From IMG/VR virus record IMGVR_UViG_3300042359_000853, positions 124,001-188,000 of that record: a stretch of DNA of 64,000 nucleotides. One strand, given 5' to 3'. Of the stretch, positions 7,183-51,099 are shown piece by piece (positions within the stretch are counted from its first letter, which is position 1; every line of letters begins with the position of its first letter). Both the position numbers and the translations under genes were made by a program. The notes under the pieces are model-generated. The model did not search any database, had not been told where the DNA came from, and was given only the letters and a program-made list of their open reading frames with translations.

Positions 7183-10100
7183 ATGAATTTTACGATTGAG
7201 TGGTTTCAGTACATGACCTCAGATCTGGGTAATCCCAGAGTTTTTTCGATAAATAGTTTTCCGACTGCTAAAATCGCGGTCTCGATAGAAAGTAGCATCT
7301 TTCGTCTGTGGATAAATTCAGGCATTCGGTTTCAAGAGCCTGTTTCTCTAATACTTAACAATTGGACACACTTCGCTATTGTTTATACAAACGGTTCAAT
7401 AAAAATCTATAAAAACGGTCAAAAAATAGGAAATACCATTGAATATTATTCTGGTATGATCACTGATTATGATGATAAACTTTACATCGGAACTGATCTC
7501 GAAGAAGATTCTTATTTTTCTGGAAGATTATCAAATTTTAGATGGACGCAAGATGAAGTGTATTCATCAAACTTCAATCCATTGGCACAAAATTACGATG
7601 TATTAGCTGATACGATTTTATTATTGAAATTTGATGATATCAATGATTTTGTTTATGATAGCTCAGATACTGGCAAAGACACTTATGGATTCACTCTTTC
7701 TTGGAGCTCTACGAGTCCTATTGGTGGAAGTGGTTCAGTTGTTTTCAACGGTATTGATGGATATCTATATGTAGAACCGGTTGATGATTTTGATTTTTCT
7801 GCCGCTAGTATAACACCAACACAGACACCAACTCAAACCTTGACACCGACACCATCTCTAAGTATAGTTGCAACAAGTTCTACAACAACTACAACAACCA
7901 CGACTACTTCAACTTCTACTACTTCAACAACTACTTTAGAGCCAAGAGTAAATTATACAAGTAGAGTAAAATTTTTGTATAATAAAATAACTAAAATAGC
8001 TAGACGTGGTAAAGATTACTACTTCGAATGGGAACTGTTAGTTGATGAATCCTTAAAGCAAAAAGAATTAGGACTACTATCAGATGTTATGTTGAAATAC
8101 TTTGGTATAAACTGGGACAGATATCCGACCTTGGAAGATTTCAAGAAAAAATCTTGGCCACATATAAGATCTGTTACCGAAGGAGTGCAGAATGTTGAGC
8201 TTAAAAAAATATCAGATGCAAAAGGTGTTTACCAAATAGGTTGGGATTTCTATCTCGTATCTAACAACTATAGTATTGGACAAATCAAGGAACTTTTTGA
8301 GGATGGTAAGGAGATATTGAGAGTTTCTACACTTCTACAAATAGAAGATTTAACTTCAGCTACCTCAAGTATTTACGAAAAATATACCACTGGCATAGAT
8401 CTACTGAAATCAGATTATTTACTTATTTCACCTACACCCACCCCTACACAAACACCTACACCAACCGTAACGGTCACTCCTACAAAAACACCAACTAGAA
8501 CTCCAACACCAACTAGAACTATGACACCGACGGTCACTCAAACTCCAACAGTGACCGCAACACCAACTGTAACACCAACTGTAACATCAACTCTGACACC
8601 CACAGTTACACCATCTGTAACTGAAACGCCCACACAAACCTCAACTGTAACACCAACACAAACCGTAACACCAACCGAAACTTCTACTCAAACACCTACT
8701 CAAACACCAACTATTACACCTTCTGTGACTTCAACTATCACACCTACCGTTACATCAACACCAACAGAAACACCCACTCAAACATCGAGTGAGACTCCTA
8801 CCTCTACCGTTACACCTACTTTAACTGTTACACCGACTAGGACCGTAACACCGACCAATACACAAACACCTACAACCACACCAACTTCAACAATAACAGA
8901 AGGGTCGATAGCTTCGGGTGCTTTCTTCTACTTTGATCCAGGTAATACATCTTCTTATAGTGGCTCAGGAACTACTCTAAATGACATTAGTGGTAATGGT
9001 AATAACGGCTCTATATTCGGAAGTCCAGTTCATACATCTGGTGCGGGTGGATACTTCACCTTTGATGGTGTTAATGATTACATTTTGAGTCCAGACATTT
9101 ATTTCGGAGCTACCGAAACACATACTATTGAAGTTTGGATACGTCCTACCGCTGTGGATGATTGTATATGGTCCGATCTTGGACAGCCTACAATAAATGA
9201 TGGATATCATTTTGCCGGGGCACAAATATTACAAACAGGACCATTCAATCAAATCATTACTTCTTTGTGGAATGGAACTGCTGTAACTAGAGTAGTCAAT
9301 GGTGCGGGTAGTTATCTTAATACCTGGAAGCAAGTAGTTAGAGTGTATAACGGTAGTGTATTAACATCATATCTCGATGGGGTCATCGGTGGAACAATTT
9401 CAATTGCATATGATTCTCCACACAATGATGGAATCACCGATTGGTATTTAGCTTTTGGTGCTATTGATACGACTACTTACTTGGGCTCGGTTGCTGGTTA
9501 TTTTGCTGGTGGATATGGTATTATTCGATATTATAGAAGAGCTCTCTCTGCTAGTGAGGTTCTACAAAATTATAACTCAACGGTCTATAGCTACAACACC
9601 ACTACAACAACTACAACAACTATTGCACCTTCTTCAACACCAACTCCTACTCAAACACCTACTCAAACACCCACTTCTAGTCAAACACCAACCACCACAC
9701 CAACATCAAGTATAACAAACACACCAACTCAAACTCCTACAAATACTCCTTCTGTTACAACAACATCGGCTCCTGTTACTCTAGGGTTGGTTATTGAGTT
9801 GGATGCCTATGATTCTTCCAGCTATCCAGGGTCAGGAACAACAGTTTCTAACTTGCGGTCACCTGGAACCTACGATCATACGCTTACGGGCTCATCATTT
9901 ACAACTTTAAATGGTATCAAATGTTTTGACTGTTCATCAGGAACAAAGAGAGTTGTTGTAAATGGAACTGGTCCTCTCCTACCTACTACTGGATATACCT
10001 ATATTACTTGGGGTAGATTGAAAAACGATACCAGTGGATTTAGAACTTTACTTTACACAAATTCTCCTAAATATACACCAATAACTATCCCCGATGGTTC

Positions 10101-47709: not shown

Positions 47710-48651
47710 TTAAATCTTGATTCCTGTCACTGGATCGTAGTTTAAAATAAGAATCTCACGACCTTTTTCTTGTGGTTTTTTTGTTGATGCGTTATTTCCA
47801 CCTGAGGCAGAGGATCGATTAACTTCTTTTTCATACCACACATATTTATCTTTCGGAAGAAGCTCTTCAAGTAATGGAAAGTAATAATAAGATAGAGACC
47901 ACCTTGAAGATGTAGTTTTAAGAAGTTCTAATAACCTTCTATGTGAAGCGGGACCGAATACACCTTCAGAATCTGCACCATACCAAAATAATCTTTTAGC
48001 ATCATCTTCACCCTTTTCATTTGGTCTAAAATAAGGTGGATCTAGATATAGATAAGTTGTTGGGCTATCCCATTTTCTAATCAGAACCTCGAAATCTAGA
48101 TTATTAAATTCAGTGATTGAATTTAACTTCTGCTCATATTTGCCCTCTTTAAGTTTTTTTAGAAGTGTAAGAAGTTTTAGTCGGTCTTTATCTTTTTTGT
48201 AACCATTAAACCCAGCTCCTCTTGGATAAACCGAATTGTGAGAAGATGTGATTAAAAACGCGTAGATTGCTGCTCTCTTTAGGTCAGGAATCTCGAAATC
48301 TGTAATATCCAAGAAATCATTCTTGGTATATTTGTGGTAGATAGATTTGTAAAAATCCCATTTTTTTAAGGGGTCAGTTTCTGTCGTTCTTAGAGGACCA
48401 GATAAGAACTTTTCTAGAACATCTACGAATGCATCTTTTTGAGAAGCACATTTGAAGAGATTGACTTGGTGTCTGTTTTTATCATTGAAGATGACTTTGT
48501 CAAAGACCAACTCTGGATCATCCATGTAAGTGGCAAAGCTACCACTGAATGGTTCAATATAACAATCTATACCGGTTTTGGGAATTTTTTTATTGATAAA
48601 TTCCATAAAAACATTCGAACTCTTGCCGCCAAAAAAACTGATAATTGACAT
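47710..48651 (-). CDS. dam: DNA adenine methyltransferase (Dam/D12 class), copy 2
   Basis: SFFGGKS, EPFSGS, FNDKN, LDPPY. Confidence 0.9.
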   Translation of the reverse strand: MSIISFFGGKSSNVFMEFINKKIPKTGIDCYIEPFSGSFATYMDDPELVFDKVIFNDKNRHQVNLFKCASQKDAFVDVLEKFLSGPLRTTETDPLKKWDFYKSIYHKYTKNDFLDITDFEIPDLKRAAIYAFLITSSHNSVYPRGAGFNGYKKDKDRLKLLTLLKKLKEGKYEQKLNSITEFNNLDFEVLIRKWDSPTTYLYLDPPYFRPNEKGEDDAKRLFWYGADSEGVFGPASHRRLLELLKTTSSRWSLSYYYFPLLEELLPKDKYVWYEKEVNRSSASGGNNASTKKPQEKGREILILNYDPVTGIKI

Positions 48652-48720: not shown

Positions 48721-48750
48721 AAAAAAACCCAACTCTTCTGGAGTTGGGTT
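48721..48750 (-). terminator. Intrinsic terminator after tmRNA
   Basis: Minus strand AACCCAACTC-CAGAA-GAGTTGGGTTTTTTT. Confidence 0.9.
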
Positions 48751-48753
48751 ACT

Positions 48754-49103
48754 TGGTGGAGGTGCTGGGATTCGAACCCAGGTTTCTACATTTACCTAAA
48801 TAATCAATCATTCACAAGCTTAGAACTCTTTTCTAAGAGAACCAACTATCGGATTTTATCGAAGAACCTTCCGAAAAAACTTTTGAGGCTATTTATAGAG
48901 TTACCTCATTCTCGGAAACGTCTAGGCTACGGCCAATCTGTTTGCCTTTAGGATGTTGTTGCGTAGGGCGAATACTAAGTCTTCAACGCTTCCTACTTCA
49001 TTCGTGTTGCCACTTAAAGTTTTCATACAACTTATGAATCGGTGAGTATGATCCGATGCTTGCTTGATTACCCGAATAAATGAGTCAAAAGCCATTCACC
49101 CCC
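48754..49103 (-). ncRNA. ssrA: tmRNA
   Basis: 5' GGGGGTGAATGGCTTTTGAC, 3' GGGTTCGAATCCCAGCACCTCCACCA; 7-bp acceptor stem with G3.U wobble and encoded CCA; internal tag ORF 48922-49011 ending LAVA*. Confidence 0.93.
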
Positions 49104-49440: not shown

Positions 49441-51099
49441 TTAGTCAAATTTGAATTTTATAGTGCCGGTCTCAAATACAATAGTAGGTTTGAAACCCGT
49501 ATCGTCAAAAAGTTTTTTGTAGGTTTCAAGCTCTCTTTTCACCGTTAGGATAGGAGTTTCATCTACTGGAAGCAATAGATAGAAGTTTTCATCATCGGTA
49601 TAAACCTTTTTTGAGTTGAATAACCTTTGTCTTTTCATCTTCATAATCAGTGAGCCATATTTAGCTGAGATAGATGGATCTAGACCTACTTTTCTAGCTA
49701 TACGAAGATTATTCCAATTTACACCGAGAGTTGCTCTTGCTAATCTTTCGAGAAAAGAAATGTTTTGCATTTCAGTATGTGTATGCTCTGAGAAATATCC
49801 AACAGAGATGTTTGTACATTCTGGTATAAGATCCATAAATGATGCTGAATCGGTGAACACACCGGTGTTATCTAACCTCATCTGCATACCATTCGCGTTA
49901 AGTTCATCACATAGACTTTGAGCAAAGACGTTTGAGCAACAAGTTTGAGAAAGTTGAGAAGTGATTACTGAGAAATAGTTTCTTCTATCAAAAGAAATAC
50001 ATTTTTTCATACCTCTAAGATGTTGTATAGTATCAAAGTTTTCAGCTACTTTACTAGATCCAATAGCCCCGCGCTCTTCACCAATAAAGAAGTAATACAC
50101 ACCAGGTATTCTGTTAGCAATCATATAAAGAAGTATAGTAACACCAGCCTTATCATCAGCTCCAAGTATAGATGTTCCATCAGTTACAAAAATTTCATCT
50201 CCGTTCTCGGTATAGGAAAGAACTCTAACTGCACTTTTAGTTCTTGATGCTGTGTCAGTGTGACAAGTAAACATGGTATCAGAATTTCCGATGACTAAGT
50301 AGTAGTTTCCCCACTGGTCCTTTTGTAGACCAGGAACAGGTAGATATTCCATGACTTCTTCTTCGTGTCCATGTGGATAAGTCTCAGTTGTAAGAGATAA
50401 GAAAGTAGATCGAACGTCTTTTGGATCATATTGAAATGGACGAACCGTTACTGGATCCCCTTTAGCTACTGAATAATATTTACTACCATAACTAGATCCG
50501 TAACCATAAGATGTTCCGGTTCCCCAACTTTTGTTGCCACTTTTAGATGACCACGAACCCGAACCACCATACAATTCAACATCTGAACCATCGTAATAAT
50601 CATAATCATCATCACGAGCACCTTTAGAAGTAGAAGTTGATCCAGAAGTTTTGCTCAAACTAGGAATAAGAGGTTTTTTCTGAACCCAACGATTATAATA
50701 GATCAAAAAGTTCTGAACAAGGGAGTCTAATTGTTTTTTGGTGTATTTAGAAGAAAAATCCGGATTTTTACCCATGAAATATTTTAGAAGAGCACTCACA
50801 CCAATCACACCGGTCTTTTCTCCAAGTACGACATCAAAATAATCAGGTGAAGTAGAGCAGTCTAAAGTTTTCAGATTTATCTTGTTTTCATACTTATCAT
50901 TTTGGTGTAGATCGAAGAAAAACTCACAAACAACAATTGTTTCATCCAACGACTTTGATGTTTTATCATTAACTTTGGCTTTATCATAGGATAAATCTGA
51001 TAGATCGCCGAGCATCACCCAAAATCCATCTGTGAAATTAATTAGTGGCCCGGATTCTCCACCTTCTAACATTTCTATTTTTTCTTTTTCTTTTTGCAT
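49441..51099 (-). CDS. M28/M20-like zinc hydrolase, copy 1, with extra N-terminal domain
   Basis: YPHGHE, FTCHTDT, LGADDKAG, GEERG, SFDRR, FTDS, PECTNISVGY..EH. Confidence 0.85.
   Translation of the reverse strand: MQKEKEKIEMLEGGESGPLINFTDGFWVMLGDLSDLSYDKAKVNDKTSKSLDETIVVCEFFFDLHQNDKYENKINLKTLDCSTSPDYFDVVLGEKTGVIGVSALLKYFMGKNPDFSSKYTKKQLDSLVQNFLIYYNRWVQKKPLIPSLSKTSGSTSTSKGARDDDYDYYDGSDVELYGGSGSWSSKSGNKSWGTGTSYGYGSSYGSKYYSVAKGDPVTVRPFQYDPKDVRSTFLSLTTETYPHGHEEEVMEYLPVPGLQKDQWGNYYLVIGNSDTMFTCHTDTASRTKSAVRVLSYTENGDEIFVTDGTSILGADDKAGVTILLYMIANRIPGVYYFFIGEERGAIGSSKVAENFDTIQHLRGMKKCISFDRRNYFSVITSQLSQTCCSNVFAQSLCDELNANGMQMRLDNTGVFTDSASFMDLIPECTNISVGYFSEHTHTEMQNISFLERLARATLGVNWNNLRIARKVGLDPSISAKYGSLIMKMKRQRLFNSKKVYTDDENFYLLLPVDETPILTVKRELETYKKLFDDTGFKPTIVFETGTIKFKFD

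What the first reader, a model, noticed from the sequence alone, without database searches (positions are those of the whole stretch)
48754..49103. Phage tmRNA with an unusually long 29-residue tag
After the resume context UUAAGU-GGC the tag reads GNTNEVGSVEDLVFALRNNILKANRLAVA* (49011 to 48922). That is roughly three times the usual ~10-aa Bacteroidota tag (GExNYALAA type). It has an amphipathic helix and ends LAVA rather than LAA. It may redirect rescued proteins to a different protease or adaptor, or counter tRNA/mRNA-cleaving defences.
Basis: partly seen in the sequence, partly recalled or inferred. Interest (0 to 1): 0.7.

Follow-up and report, generated by a model that had tools for sequence, protein, structure and literature searches.

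The report
Huge-phage tmRNA with conserved long tag
A giant lake-water phage carries its own expressed ribosome-rescue RNA (tmRNA) plus the partner protein SmpB, and its unusually long 29-residue tag is real and conserved across a whole clade of huge phages that standard tmRNA finders mostly miss.

Summary
ARAGORN and Rfam (65.3 bits) both call a tmRNA at window 48754-49103 (-) and place the resume codon at the same GGC. This gives the tag GNTNEVGSVEDLVFALRNNILKANRLAVA*.

The window lies in a 227.6 kb fragment (about 39% complete) of a huge lake-water phage. Its nearest named relatives are the 634-735 kb genomes of Al-Shayeb 2020.

The tmRNA is not a one-off. 73 of 80 syntenic viral loci carry it, as 47 distinct sequences with 27-30-codon tags.
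- The frame is open in all 47; both shifted frames have stops in all 47.
- All 48 gap runs inside the tag are multiples of 3, against 76 of 901 outside.
- pN/pS is lowest in frame, including in codons 1-6.
- PK1 covaries and mostly ends 9-11 nt before the resume codon.
- A(-4) is invariant, and G3:U70 is present in all 47.

So the refuting scenario, a resume codon further downstream, is unlikely.

The same genome encodes SmpB and a ClpC/ClpA-like unfoldase. Metatranscriptomes contain a discrete RNA of about 330 nt that matches the gene.

New findings:
- Two covarying hairpins lie inside the tag ORF.
- ARAGORN finds only 6 of the 47.
- The tag type was not found in about 185,000 cellular species genomes.

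Where the tag sends proteins is still inference. The claimed amphipathic helix is not significant.

The parts
48754..49103 (-). tmRNA (ssrA) gene, 350 nt, with the 3' CCA encoded
   Evidence: ARAGORN. Rfam RF00023, 65.3 bits, full length. Metatranscriptome contigs at 48756-49093 and 48765-49090 with 0 differences and no flanking sequence assembled.
49097..49103 (-). 5' strand of the acceptor stem (GGGGGUG). It pairs with CACCUCC at the 3' end and includes G3:U70, the alanine identity pair.
   Evidence: Sequence. G3:U70 in 47 of 47 relatives, all 7 positions paired in 46 of 47, and pair 5:68 covaries (A-U 28, G-C 12, G-U 7).
49023..49057 (-). Pseudoknot 1. Stem 1 is AUCGG/CCGAU (gene positions 47-51 and 62-66). 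Stem 2 is UCAUAC/GUAUGA (positions 53-58 and 76-81). It ends 11 nt before the resume codon.
   Evidence: Stem 1 switches AUCGG/CCGAU to GUCGG/CCGAC, and stem 2 has many compensatory versions. Spacing to the resume codon is 9-11 nt in about half of the 40 sequences scored before the script stopped; the heuristic gave 7-23 nt in the rest.
49012..49022 (-). Single-stranded spacer AAACUUUAAGU, with U(-5) and A(-4) before the resume codon
   Evidence: A(-4) and A(-3) in 47 of 47 and U(-5) in 44 of 47. These match E. coli U85/A86, which set the frame (PMC2481249).
48922..49011 (-). Tag reading frame: resume codon GGC, 29 sense codons (GNTNEVGSVEDLVFALRNNILKANRLAVA), stop UAG at 48924-48922
   Evidence: Family test: 0 of 47 have internal stops in frame against 47 of 47 in both shifted frames; 48 of 48 gap runs are multiples of 3; pN/pS is 0.585 against 0.74 and 1.08. 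Codons 1-6 give 0.44 against 0.87 and 4.3.
48963..48996 (-). Conserved RNA hairpin A inside the tag ORF (codons 6-17; GUAGG..GCG / CGC.CCUAC)
   Evidence: 91.6% of cells are paired against about 40% when the partners are slid, and all 4 inner pairs show compensatory changes (for example AU 19, CG 17, GC 5).
48754..48782 (-). T-arm (CCUGGGUUCGAAUCCCAGC), 3' acceptor strand and ACCA
   Evidence: Sequence and Rfam alignment. This lineage keeps a canonical T-loop, but only 11 of 46 relatives do.
48726..48750 (-). Intrinsic terminator directly after the tmRNA (10-bp stem, then a T run)
   Evidence: Comparable hairpin-plus-T-run sequences follow most relatives.
49441..51099 (-). Upstream 552-aa gene with a C-terminal peptidase-like domain. 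It is the syntenic marker used to find relatives; a functional link to the tmRNA is not shown.
   Evidence: PHROG 4191 'peptidase', E 1e-63. Weak PepT-like matches. Homologues lie 0.5-3 kb upstream of the tmRNA in 73 of 80 loci.

Best explanation
This is a working, phage-encoded tmRNA. It belongs to a trans-translation module that the huge phage brings with it, made of the tmRNA plus the phage's own SmpB.

Proposed steps:
1. The RNA is transcribed as a separate unit and ends at its own terminator.
2. It is charged with alanine through the G3:U70 identity pair.
3. It enters stalled ribosomes together with SmpB.
4. Translation resumes at GGC, 11 nt after pseudoknot 1, and adds a 29-residue tag (30 with the tmRNA-borne alanine) that ends in small hydrophobic residues.

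The tag peptide is conserved across the clade: core NEVG(T/S)xEDLV(A/F)AL(Q/R)NN, then an acidic residue, Leu, and a small hydrophobic C-terminus. Most likely it acts as a two-part degron. The C-terminal nonpolar residues would engage a Clp-type unfoldase, and the conserved internal segment would act as a specificity or adaptor handle. The likely receiver is a Clp protease, either the host's or the phage's own (a ClpC/A-like ATPase with an LGF loop in this genome, and ClpP in complete relatives). The benefit to the phage would be recycling of ribosomes and removal of truncated proteins during infection.

Shown:
- The gene, its structural elements and the reading frame.
- Conservation and coding-type evolution of the tag.
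- SmpB and the Clp ATPase in the same genome.
- Presence as a discrete RNA-sized piece in RNA libraries.

Inferred:
- Alanine charging.
- Actual tagging.
- That the tag is a degron.
- Which protease reads it.
- The benefit to the phage.
For: Gene and frame:
- ARAGORN and Rfam agree on the gene and the resume codon.
- 47 distinct relatives keep the frame open, while both shifted frames have stops in all 47. All 48 gap runs in the tag are multiples of 3, against 76 of 901 elsewhere. pN/pS is lowest in frame. This also holds in codons 1-6 and in the hairpin-loop codons.
- The resume codon is always G-initial, with invariant A(-4) and U(-5) in 44 of 47, matching the E. coli frame determinants.
- PK1 covaries and, in about half of the 40 sequences scored, ends 9-11 nt upstream.
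- G3:U70 is present in 47 of 47 and the acceptor stem covaries.

Partners:
- SmpB is in the same genome, above NCBIfam's equivalog cut-off, with the conserved GKKxYDKR tail.
- A 709-aa two-ring Clp ATPase with LGF just after the TSNVG motif of its second ATPase ring (D2) lies about 2.3 kb from SmpB.
- ClpP (2-3 copies) occurs in 3 of 4 complete relatives.

Expression:
- Contigs of 326 and 338 nt that match the gene bounds, with 0 differences, are the only pieces assembled across 3.4 kb in two metatranscriptomes.
- In a third, depth is 218-379 on the tmRNA against 2-5 on the flanks.

Phage-specific and old:
- The motif occurs in 44 viral contigs. The single cellular hit is a chance match inside an enzyme ORF.
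- The phage SmpB forms its own clade.
Against: - There is no direct evidence that any protein carries the tag.
- Part of the tag's nucleotide conservation comes from two RNA hairpins inside the ORF, so the peptide sequence is not the only constraint.
- Overall pN/pS of 0.59 indicates only moderate purifying selection.
- An in-frame alternative resume site (UAGUA|GCU in most relatives, UAGUA|UUC here) sits in the hairpin A loop, and ARAGORN chose a late start near it in two relatives.
- No ClpP, Lon or SspB was found in the 227 kb held, which is only about 39% of the genome. The 735 kb relative lacks ClpP. Nothing ties the Clp genes to the tag.
- RNA libraries can contain DNA, and contigs carry no strand information.
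Confidence: 0.7

Rival explanations
1. Translation resumes further downstream, in the same frame, at the UAGUA|N site in the loop of hairpin A (codon 15, UUC in this window and GCU in most relatives). The real tag would then be about 15 residues ((F/A)AL(R/Q)NN...LAVA), and the upstream 14 'codons' would be untranslated structured RNA.
For: UAGUA|GCU resembles E. coli UAGUC|GCA, and GCU (Ala) is a typical resume codon (alignment). ARAGORN picked a late in-frame start in L010 and L011. The upstream half overlaps a conserved hairpin, which could account for its conservation. A tag of about 15 aa would be ordinary.
Against: - PK1 would lie about 53 nt upstream of that site instead of 9-11 nt.
- The site is in a hairpin loop with its first codon paired, unlike the canonical single-stranded context.
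- Codon 15 is UUY (non-G) in several lineages, including this window, whereas codon 1 is always GGC, GGA or GCA.
- Codons 1-6, outside any hairpin, show an in-frame coding signature (pN/pS 0.44 against 0.87 and 4.3), and both indels there are 3 nt long.
- The Rfam alignment places the resume codon at GGC.
- A divergent relative, LR756504, also has a 24-codon frame from the canonical position.
Confidence: 0.1
2. The frame is translated, but its length and most of its sequence are by-products of RNA-level needs: two hairpins in the mRNA-like domain that stand in for helix 5 and the reduced pseudoknots. Only the last few nonpolar residues matter, as a generic degron for host ClpXP/ClpAP. There is no special adaptor or phage protease.
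For: Two covarying hairpins occupy codons 6-17 and 21-27. Amino-acid changes at tag positions 10 and 15 track base-pair covariation (AGU..GCU, CGU..GCG, GCU..AGC). Third positions in the core are unusually conserved. The C-terminus varies among small hydrophobic endings (VA, LV, TV, AV, TA), as a loose degron would.
Against: The hairpin-loop codons E-D-L-V are unpaired yet have the strongest purifying signal (pN/pS 0.14 in frame). The unpaired QNN segment and codons 1-6 are also conserved at the protein level through synonymous changes. RNA structure alone does not require an open frame or indels in threes.
Confidence: 0.2
3. The tmRNA's value to the phage is ribosome rescue only, or sensing or titrating the host's trans-translation state to time development. 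The fate of tagged proteins would be irrelevant.
For: In E. coli phage assays the tag's function is not critical for plaque formation; rescue is (PMC2481249). Al-Shayeb 2020 mentions tmRNA as a sensor of host state. A TLD-only phage tmRNA (DS6A) exists (PMC4131195).
Against: The tag is the best-conserved segment of the molecule (84-90% column identity) and evolves as coding sequence across 47 variants. That is unexpected if its product did not matter.
Confidence: 0.1
4. It is a recently captured or mis-assembled host ssrA gene with no phage-specific role.
For: Phages are known to integrate at ssrA genes, which can leave host ssrA sequence at the edge of a prophage (my recollection; not checked with the tools).
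Against: The gene sits at the same position in 73 of 80 related viral loci and in complete 635-642 kb phage genomes. The tag type was not found in about 185,000 cellular species genomes. Both flanks are phage genes. The same sequence is present in many lake metagenomes.
Confidence: 0.02

Closest known systems
Canonical one-piece bacterial tmRNA (Rfam RF00023; E. coli SsrA, tag ANDENYALAA)
   Same: - tRNA-like domain with G3:U70, T-arm and CCA.
- PK1 9-11 nt before a G-initial resume codon, with U(-5) and A(-4).
- A tag frame that ends in nonpolar residues.
- An SmpB partner encoded in the same genome.
- Total length of about 350 nt.

   Different: - It is encoded by a virus.
- The tag is 29 residues rather than about 10 and shares no sequence with known tags.
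- Two hairpins lie inside the ORF.
- About 168 nt follow the stop codon, which by my estimate leaves less room for PK2-4 than in E. coli; this was not analysed.
- Most clade members have non-canonical T-loops and fall below Rfam's gathering score.
Mycobacteriophage Bxz1-type tmRNA (cluster C mycobacteriophages) and Bacillus phage G tmRNA
   Same: They are phage-encoded tmRNAs (PMC4131195). ARAGORN gives Bxz1's tag as ATDTDATVTDAEIEAFFAEEAAALV, which is 25 aa, acidic and ends in ALV. Phage G's tag ends NNELQVA, like the ...NELEVA of this clade.
   Different: Neither Bxz1 nor phage G encodes SmpB, whereas this clade always does. BLASTN of this tmRNA against the phage collection found no match. 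The hosts differ (Actinomycetota, Bacillota). Phage G's tag is only 13 aa.
Mycoplasma long ssrA tags (27 aa, read by Lon)
   Same: The tag is long, in the upper part of the documented 8-35 range. The idea that tag length and sequence co-evolve with the protease that reads it also applies (PMC8403727; PMC8012679).
   Different: I saw no sequence similarity to the Mycoplasma tag as I remember it; this was not computed. No Lon gene was found in this phage or its four complete relatives, which carry Clp-type genes instead. The predicted Bacteroidota hosts are not known to lack ClpXP. The phage tag is acidic and poor in aromatics.
tmRNA and SmpB genes reported in huge phages (Al-Shayeb et al. 2020, Nature 578:425)
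   Same: The nearest named relatives are four records whose sizes (634,780, 636,363, 642,428 and 735,411 bp) match that paper's four largest genomes. The paper places all its largest genomes in the Mahaphage clade and lists tmRNA and SmpB among translation genes of huge phages.
   Different: That report is a presence call made with ARAGORN, without analysis of the tags. ARAGORN detects only 6 of 47 members here and none in the four 13-kb loci taken from the four large genomes. The conserved long tag, the hairpins inside the ORF and the odd T-loops are not described in any paper I could find.

Membership tests
tmRNA (SsrA; Rfam RF00023) | Covariance-model match above the curated gathering score | tested here: met
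   65.3 bits against 47, E 3.4e-23, model positions 1-374. ARAGORN agrees. Many clade relatives fall below the threshold.
tmRNA (SsrA; Rfam RF00023) | tRNA-like domain: 7-bp acceptor stem with G3:U70 (the alanine identity pair), T-arm and 3' CCA | tested here: met
   GGGGGUG/CACCUCC plus ACCA, and T-loop GGGUUCGAAUCCC. G3:U70 in 47 of 47 relatives, and the stem covaries.
tmRNA (SsrA; Rfam RF00023) | Pseudoknot 1 just upstream of a resume codon that has no start codon, with the U(-5)/A(-4) frame determinants | tested here: met
   PK1 with compensatory changes lies 11 nt upstream here, and 9-11 nt upstream in about half of the relatives scored. A(-4) in 47 of 47 and U(-5) in 44 of 47. Rule taken from PMC2481249.
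tmRNA (SsrA; Rfam RF00023) | Short open tag frame that ends in nonpolar residues and a stop codon | tested here: met
   29 codons ending LAVA plus UAG. The frame shows a coding signature across the family. The length lies within the published 8-35 range.
tmRNA (SsrA; Rfam RF00023) | A cognate SmpB is available | tested here: met
   A 149-aa SmpB is encoded in the same phage genome (G000:C1:76894-77343). Pfam gives 166.9 bits and NCBIfam's equivalog model 174.6 against a cut-off of 130.
tmRNA (SsrA; Rfam RF00023) | Accumulates as a discrete stable small RNA | tested here: met
   Contigs of 326-338 nt that coincide with the gene are the only pieces assembled in two metatranscriptomes, and depth is about 100 times that of the flanks in a third. 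Caveat: these are assembled contigs without strand information.
tmRNA (SsrA; Rfam RF00023) | Is charged with alanine, tags stalled nascent chains and triggers their degradation | not testable with these tools
   This needs biochemistry or proteomics.
Lon-directed long ssrA tags (Mycoplasma type) | A long tag rich in hydrophobic and aromatic residues, in a system where Lon is the cytosolic protease and ClpXP is absent | tested here: not met
   No Lon_C domain in this phage or in 4 complete relatives. Clp-type ATPase and ClpP genes are present instead. The family tag is acidic and has at most one aromatic residue. The host's proteases are unknown.
SspB-adaptor-assisted ssrA tags (proteobacterial type) | An SspB adaptor that binds the N-terminal part of the tag | tested here: not met
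   No SspB domain in this phage or in 4 complete relatives. An unrelated adaptor cannot be excluded.

The most novel reading that the evidence does not exclude
The long, clade-conserved tag is a virus-specific degron that works separately from the host's ssrA tag. Together with the phage's own SmpB, its N-domain-less ClpC/A-like unfoldase and (in relatives) ClpP, it would form a self-contained viral ribosome-rescue and proteolysis module. This module would route truncated proteins to a phage-controlled protease during infection. The tag ORF would at the same time encode two functional RNA hairpins.
Probability: 0.25. Interest if true: 0.8.

Novelty: new variant of a known kind. Interest (0 to 1): 0.6.

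Why it matters
tmRNA and SmpB have been listed among the translation genes of huge phages, but only as presence calls. This work shows four further things:
- One clade of the largest known phages keeps a distinct, syntenic tmRNA family with a conserved tag of about 29 residues.
- The tag frame evolves as coding sequence while also holding two covarying RNA hairpins.
- The RNA is abundant in environmental RNA libraries.
- ARAGORN and Rfam miss most members, so phage tmRNAs are undercounted.

This gives a concrete, testable case for asking why a virus needs its own tagging system and whether viral tags address a different protease from the host's. It also provides a ready set of 47 natural tag variants for degron studies. 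If the tag proves orthogonal to host tags, it could become a new controllable degradation tag for Bacteroidota.

Tried and rejected
- Alternative genetic code (UAG read through): rejected. The standard code gives 94% ORF coverage and recoding adds nothing. 43 of 47 relatives stop at UAA.
- BLASTN of the tmRNA against the phage collection: no match.
- Exact 3'-end pattern scan: found only near-identical relatives.
- Cellular origin of the tag: the one genome-contig hit (L127) is a chance match inside a large enzyme ORF.
- Rfam at gathering threshold on 22 relatives: only 1 hit. I replaced it with my own nhmmer profile.
- Amphipathic helix: the hydrophobic moment is not above shuffles.
- ORF98, between the peptidase-like gene and the tmRNA, as a conserved adaptor: rejected. 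It is found only in the two closest relatives.
- Tag-like motif elsewhere in the phage proteome: none.
- ClpP, Lon and SspB in the 227 kb held: none.
Mar_Mega_1 (OU342829) is not in the collection.
- A covariance model of my own was not built, because a model of about 350 positions would exceed the calibration limit.
- Complex prediction was not used. A peptide with a monomer of a hexameric unfoldase would not be informative, and gene neighbourhood alone is not sufficient reason.

Full report
**1.

ARAGORN finds one RNA gene in the window: a tmRNA at 48754-49103 on the minus strand. Its tag is GNTNEVGSVEDLVFALRNNILKANRLAVA*, coded at gene positions 93-182, which is window 49011-48922 with the stop included. 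Rfam's tmRNA model matches the same coordinates end to end (65.3 bits against a gathering score of 47, E 3e-23). It aligns its resume codon to the same GGC. The sequence shows UUUAAGU|GGC and the stop UAG. The other two frames stop after 5 and 3 codons.

**2. What the genome is**

- The window is bases 124001-188000 of a 227,583-bp IMG/VR virus record that CheckV rates about 39% complete.
- It has 33% GC and uses the standard code: ORFs of at least 100 aa cover 94% of it, and recoding a stop gains nothing. It carries no tRNA genes.
- The best named relatives of the neighbouring 552-aa gene are uncultured-phage records of 634,780, 636,363, 642,428 and 735,411 bp.
- These sizes match the four largest complete genomes of Al-Shayeb et al. 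2020. That paper places all its largest genomes in the 'Mahaphage' clade and predicts Bacteroidetes hosts for those above 634 kb.
- The same DNA is present at full identity in many lake-water metagenomes.

**3. It is a family, not a one-off**

- A search with the 552-aa neighbour returned 80 viral loci.
- ARAGORN found tmRNAs in only a few of them. Their tags were similar but not identical, for example ATSNEVGTAEDLVSALRNNQLAKAELV.
- A degenerate pattern for the tag core hit 44 viral contigs. It hit one contig among about 185,000 cellular species genomes, and that hit lies inside a large enzyme ORF and is chance.
- An nhmmer profile built from these sequences found the RNA 0.5-3 kb downstream of the neighbour gene in 73 of the 80 loci. 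The 7 misses are contigs that end shortly after that gene.
- This yields 47 distinct tmRNAs of 348-383 nt with tags of 27-30 residues. The consensus is G(N/K)(T/V)xNEV(G/A)(T/S)xEDLV(A/F)ALQNN(M/L)(L/I)xVxELxVA. A sub-group ends ...ALKAIGANTPELV.
- The 642 kb and 635 kb genomes carry the same family at the syntenic position.
- The 636 kb genome has a more canonical tmRNA (65 bits) with a different 24-residue tag, DNVNSFEQSILNELFAPVEMAVAA, which I read by eye.

**4. Is the long frame the true one?**

The evidence is against it.

- Frame 0 has no internal stop in any of the 47. Both shifted frames have stops in all 47.
- All 48 gap runs inside the tag are multiples of three, against 76 of 901 outside it.
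- pN/pS is 0.585 in frame, against 0.74 and 1.08 in the shifted frames.
- The tag is the best-conserved part of the RNA, at 84-90% column identity.
- PK1 is present with compensatory changes in both stems. It ends 11 nt before the resume codon here, and 9-11 nt before it in about half of the 40 sequences scored before the script stopped. The heuristic picked stems giving 7-23 nt in the rest.
- A(-4) and A(-3) are invariant and U(-5) is present in 44 of 47. The resume codon is always GGC, GGA or GCA. This matches the E. coli determinants U85/A86 (PMC2481249).

A sharper rival came up during the work. The loop of a hairpin inside the ORF carries UAGUA|GCU (UAGUA|UUC in this window). It is in frame and resembles E. 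coli UAGUC|GCA. It would give a tag of about 15 residues, and ARAGORN chose a late start near it in two relatives. Several results argue against this rival:

- Codons 1-6, which lie outside any hairpin, still show the in-frame signature (pN/pS 0.44 against 0.87 and 4.3). The unpaired loop codons E-D-L-V show the strongest signal (0.14 against 0.62 and 0.72).
- Both indels upstream of the hairpin are 3 nt long.
- Codon 15 is UUY in several lineages, including this one.
- PK1 would be about 53 nt away from that site.

I put this rival at about 0.1.

**5. RNA structure inside the ORF**

- Two hairpins lie within the tag frame, at codons 6-17 and 21-27.
- 91.6% of cells are paired, against about 40% when the partners are slid.
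- The covariation score is 0.425 against 0.20 in shuffles.
- All four inner pairs of hairpin A have compensatory changes.
- So the mRNA-like domain is under dual constraint. Amino-acid changes at tag positions 10 and 15 follow base-pair covariation.
- In the window's own lineage, hairpin A is clear (48996-48963) and hairpin B is weak.

**6. Partners**

- The same phage genome, outside the window, encodes a 149-aa SmpB at G000:C1:76894-77343. It scores 174.6 bits on NCBIfam's equivalog model, against a cut-off of 130, and has the conserved C-terminal GKKxYDKR tail.
- This SmpB belongs to its own clade of about 23 clusters at 65-79% identity. Identity then drops sharply to 54% or less for every other hit listed, including the few that carry a cellular name. 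It is therefore not a recent capture.
- About 2.3 kb from SmpB (G000:C1:72471-74600) lies a 709-aa two-ring Clp/Hsp100 ATPase. It has no N-domain, a short UVR motif, and an LGF tripeptide just after the TSNVG motif of its second ATPase ring (D2). This is where I recall ClpA, ClpC and ClpX carrying their ClpP-docking loop, which ClpB lacks.
- All four complete relatives have SmpB and this ATPase. Three of the four have 2-3 ClpP genes. None has Lon or SspB.
- Bxz1 and phage G, the classic phages with tmRNA, have no SmpB.

**7. Expression**

- In two independent metatranscriptomes, the only contig on a 3.4 kb stretch covers 48756-49093 (338 nt) or 48765-49090 (326 nt), with no differences.
- In a third, a tmRNA fragment has word depth 218-379, against 2-5 on the flanking genes.
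- That fragment has two alleles. One is a synonymous AAU to AAC change in tag codon 4. The other turns a U-A pair in PK1 into U-G.
- The gene is followed by a 10-bp terminator.
- 30 of 47 relatives have TAnnTTTG 17-34 nt upstream, against a background of 0.046 per 60 nt. I recall this as the Bacteroidota -7 promoter motif, but I did not verify that identification with the tools. The window's own copy lacks the exact motif.
- Caveats: these are assembled contigs without strand information, and RNA libraries can contain DNA. However, DNA carry-over would not single out the tmRNA.

**8. How it most likely works**

Shown:
- A complete, expressed tmRNA with all the canonical elements.
- A long tag frame that evolves as coding sequence.
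- A cognate SmpB.

Inferred:
- The RNA is charged with alanine. G3:U70 is present in 47 of 47.
- It rescues stalled ribosomes during infection.
- It appends a 30-residue extension whose small hydrophobic C-terminus (VA, LV, TV, AV and similar) feeds a Clp-type unfoldase.
- The conserved internal EDLV(A/F)AL(Q/R)NN segment gives specificity.

Whether the receiver is the host's protease or the phage's ClpC/A-like plus ClpP pair is open.

**9. Comparison with what is known**

- Tag lengths of 8-35 residues are documented (PMC8012679).
- Mycoplasma has a 27-residue tag matched to Lon (PMC8403727).
- ARAGORN gives mycobacteriophage Bxz1 a 25-residue tag, ATDTDATVTDAEIEAFFAEEAAALV, and phage G a 13-residue tag, AKLNITNNELQVA.
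- Al-Shayeb 2020 lists tmRNA and SmpB in huge phages, identified with ARAGORN.
- No paper in the library uses the phrases 'phage tmRNA' or 'phage-encoded tmRNA'.
- New here: the clade-wide conserved tag family, its dual coding and structural nature, the constant pairing with a phage SmpB, and the environmental expression.
- Also new: ARAGORN detects only 6 of 47 members, 4 of them with the full tag. Rfam at gathering score found 1 tmRNA among 22 relatives' loci. A likely reason is that only 11 of 46 keep a canonical T-loop.

**10. Verdict**

- The finding is real and the long tag is very probably genuine.
- It is a new variant of a known kind of system rather than a new kind.
- The functional reading (a special protease or adaptor, or a counter-defence role) remains untested.
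- Interest: 0.6.

Noticed in passing
L043:7650-8032, L129:7639-8018, L130:7619-8000 and most other family members: Most clade tmRNAs have a non-canonical 7-nt T-loop (for example ACGUUG-GGCAGUA-CAACGU) in place of GGUUCGAAUCC. Only 11 of 46 are canonical-like. This is probably why ARAGORN finds only 6 of 47 and Rfam's gathering score is rarely reached. How such a tRNA-like domain folds or binds SmpB and EF-Tu is unknown.
   Followed up: partly
L140:1501-1860 (LR756501, the 735 kb phage): A weak Rfam tmRNA hit (21 bits) has a PK1-like region, ...CAAUAAAU|GGC, and a 33-codon open frame (GDYKMNAEDMMSIPTSLTGKVATESFVEDLVLA*). I could not find convincing acceptor or T-arm ends. It may be a very divergent, split or degenerate tmRNA.
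   Followed up: partly
L160:1147-3276 (-) = G000:C1:72471-74600; L128:1072-1458 (+): The phage encodes an N-domain-less two-ring ClpC/ClpA-like ATPase with an LGF loop about 2.3 kb from smpB, and a thioredoxin directly upstream of smpB. In LR756504 the same ATPase lies about 5 kb from smpB. In LR756502 a ClpP-like gene lies about 3 kb from smpB.
   Followed up: partly
window 49441-51099 (-) and 47710-48651 (-): The tmRNA sits in a conserved block between a 552-aa protein and a D12-class Dam methyltransferase. The 552-aa protein has a C-terminal peptidase-like domain (PHROG 4191; weak PepT/M20 matches). The peptidase-like gene is found in 80 of 80 loci and the methylase in 60 of 80. No functional link to tagging is shown.
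   Followed up: partly
L137:2039-2114 (-) (LR756504, next to its tmRNA): ARAGORN reports a tRNA with a four-base anticodon (tcta) beside a tRNA-Met and the tmRNA. This could be a frameshift-suppressor-like tRNA or a prediction artefact.
   Followed up: no
L136:1373-1446 (+) (Bacillus phage G): Phage G has a predicted ochre-suppressor tRNA (anticodon tta) about 50 nt upstream of its tmRNA, inside a tRNA cluster.
   Followed up: no
whole record G000 (227,583 bp): There are no tRNA genes in the 227 kb held, although related huge phages carry tRNA arrays next to their tmRNA. This may simply reflect the missing 60% or so of the genome.
   Followed up: no
window 48970-49073 in run X15: Two co-existing alleles of the tmRNA appear in one metatranscriptome (depths 218 and 379). 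They differ at 49000 (synonymous in tag codon 4) and 49023 (U-A to U-G in PK1 stem 2), and they match the L005-type strain.
   Followed up: partly
window 8001-10000: There is a local rise in GC (0.40 against about 0.33) with strongly negative GC skew (-0.18) relative to the rest of the window.
   Followed up: no
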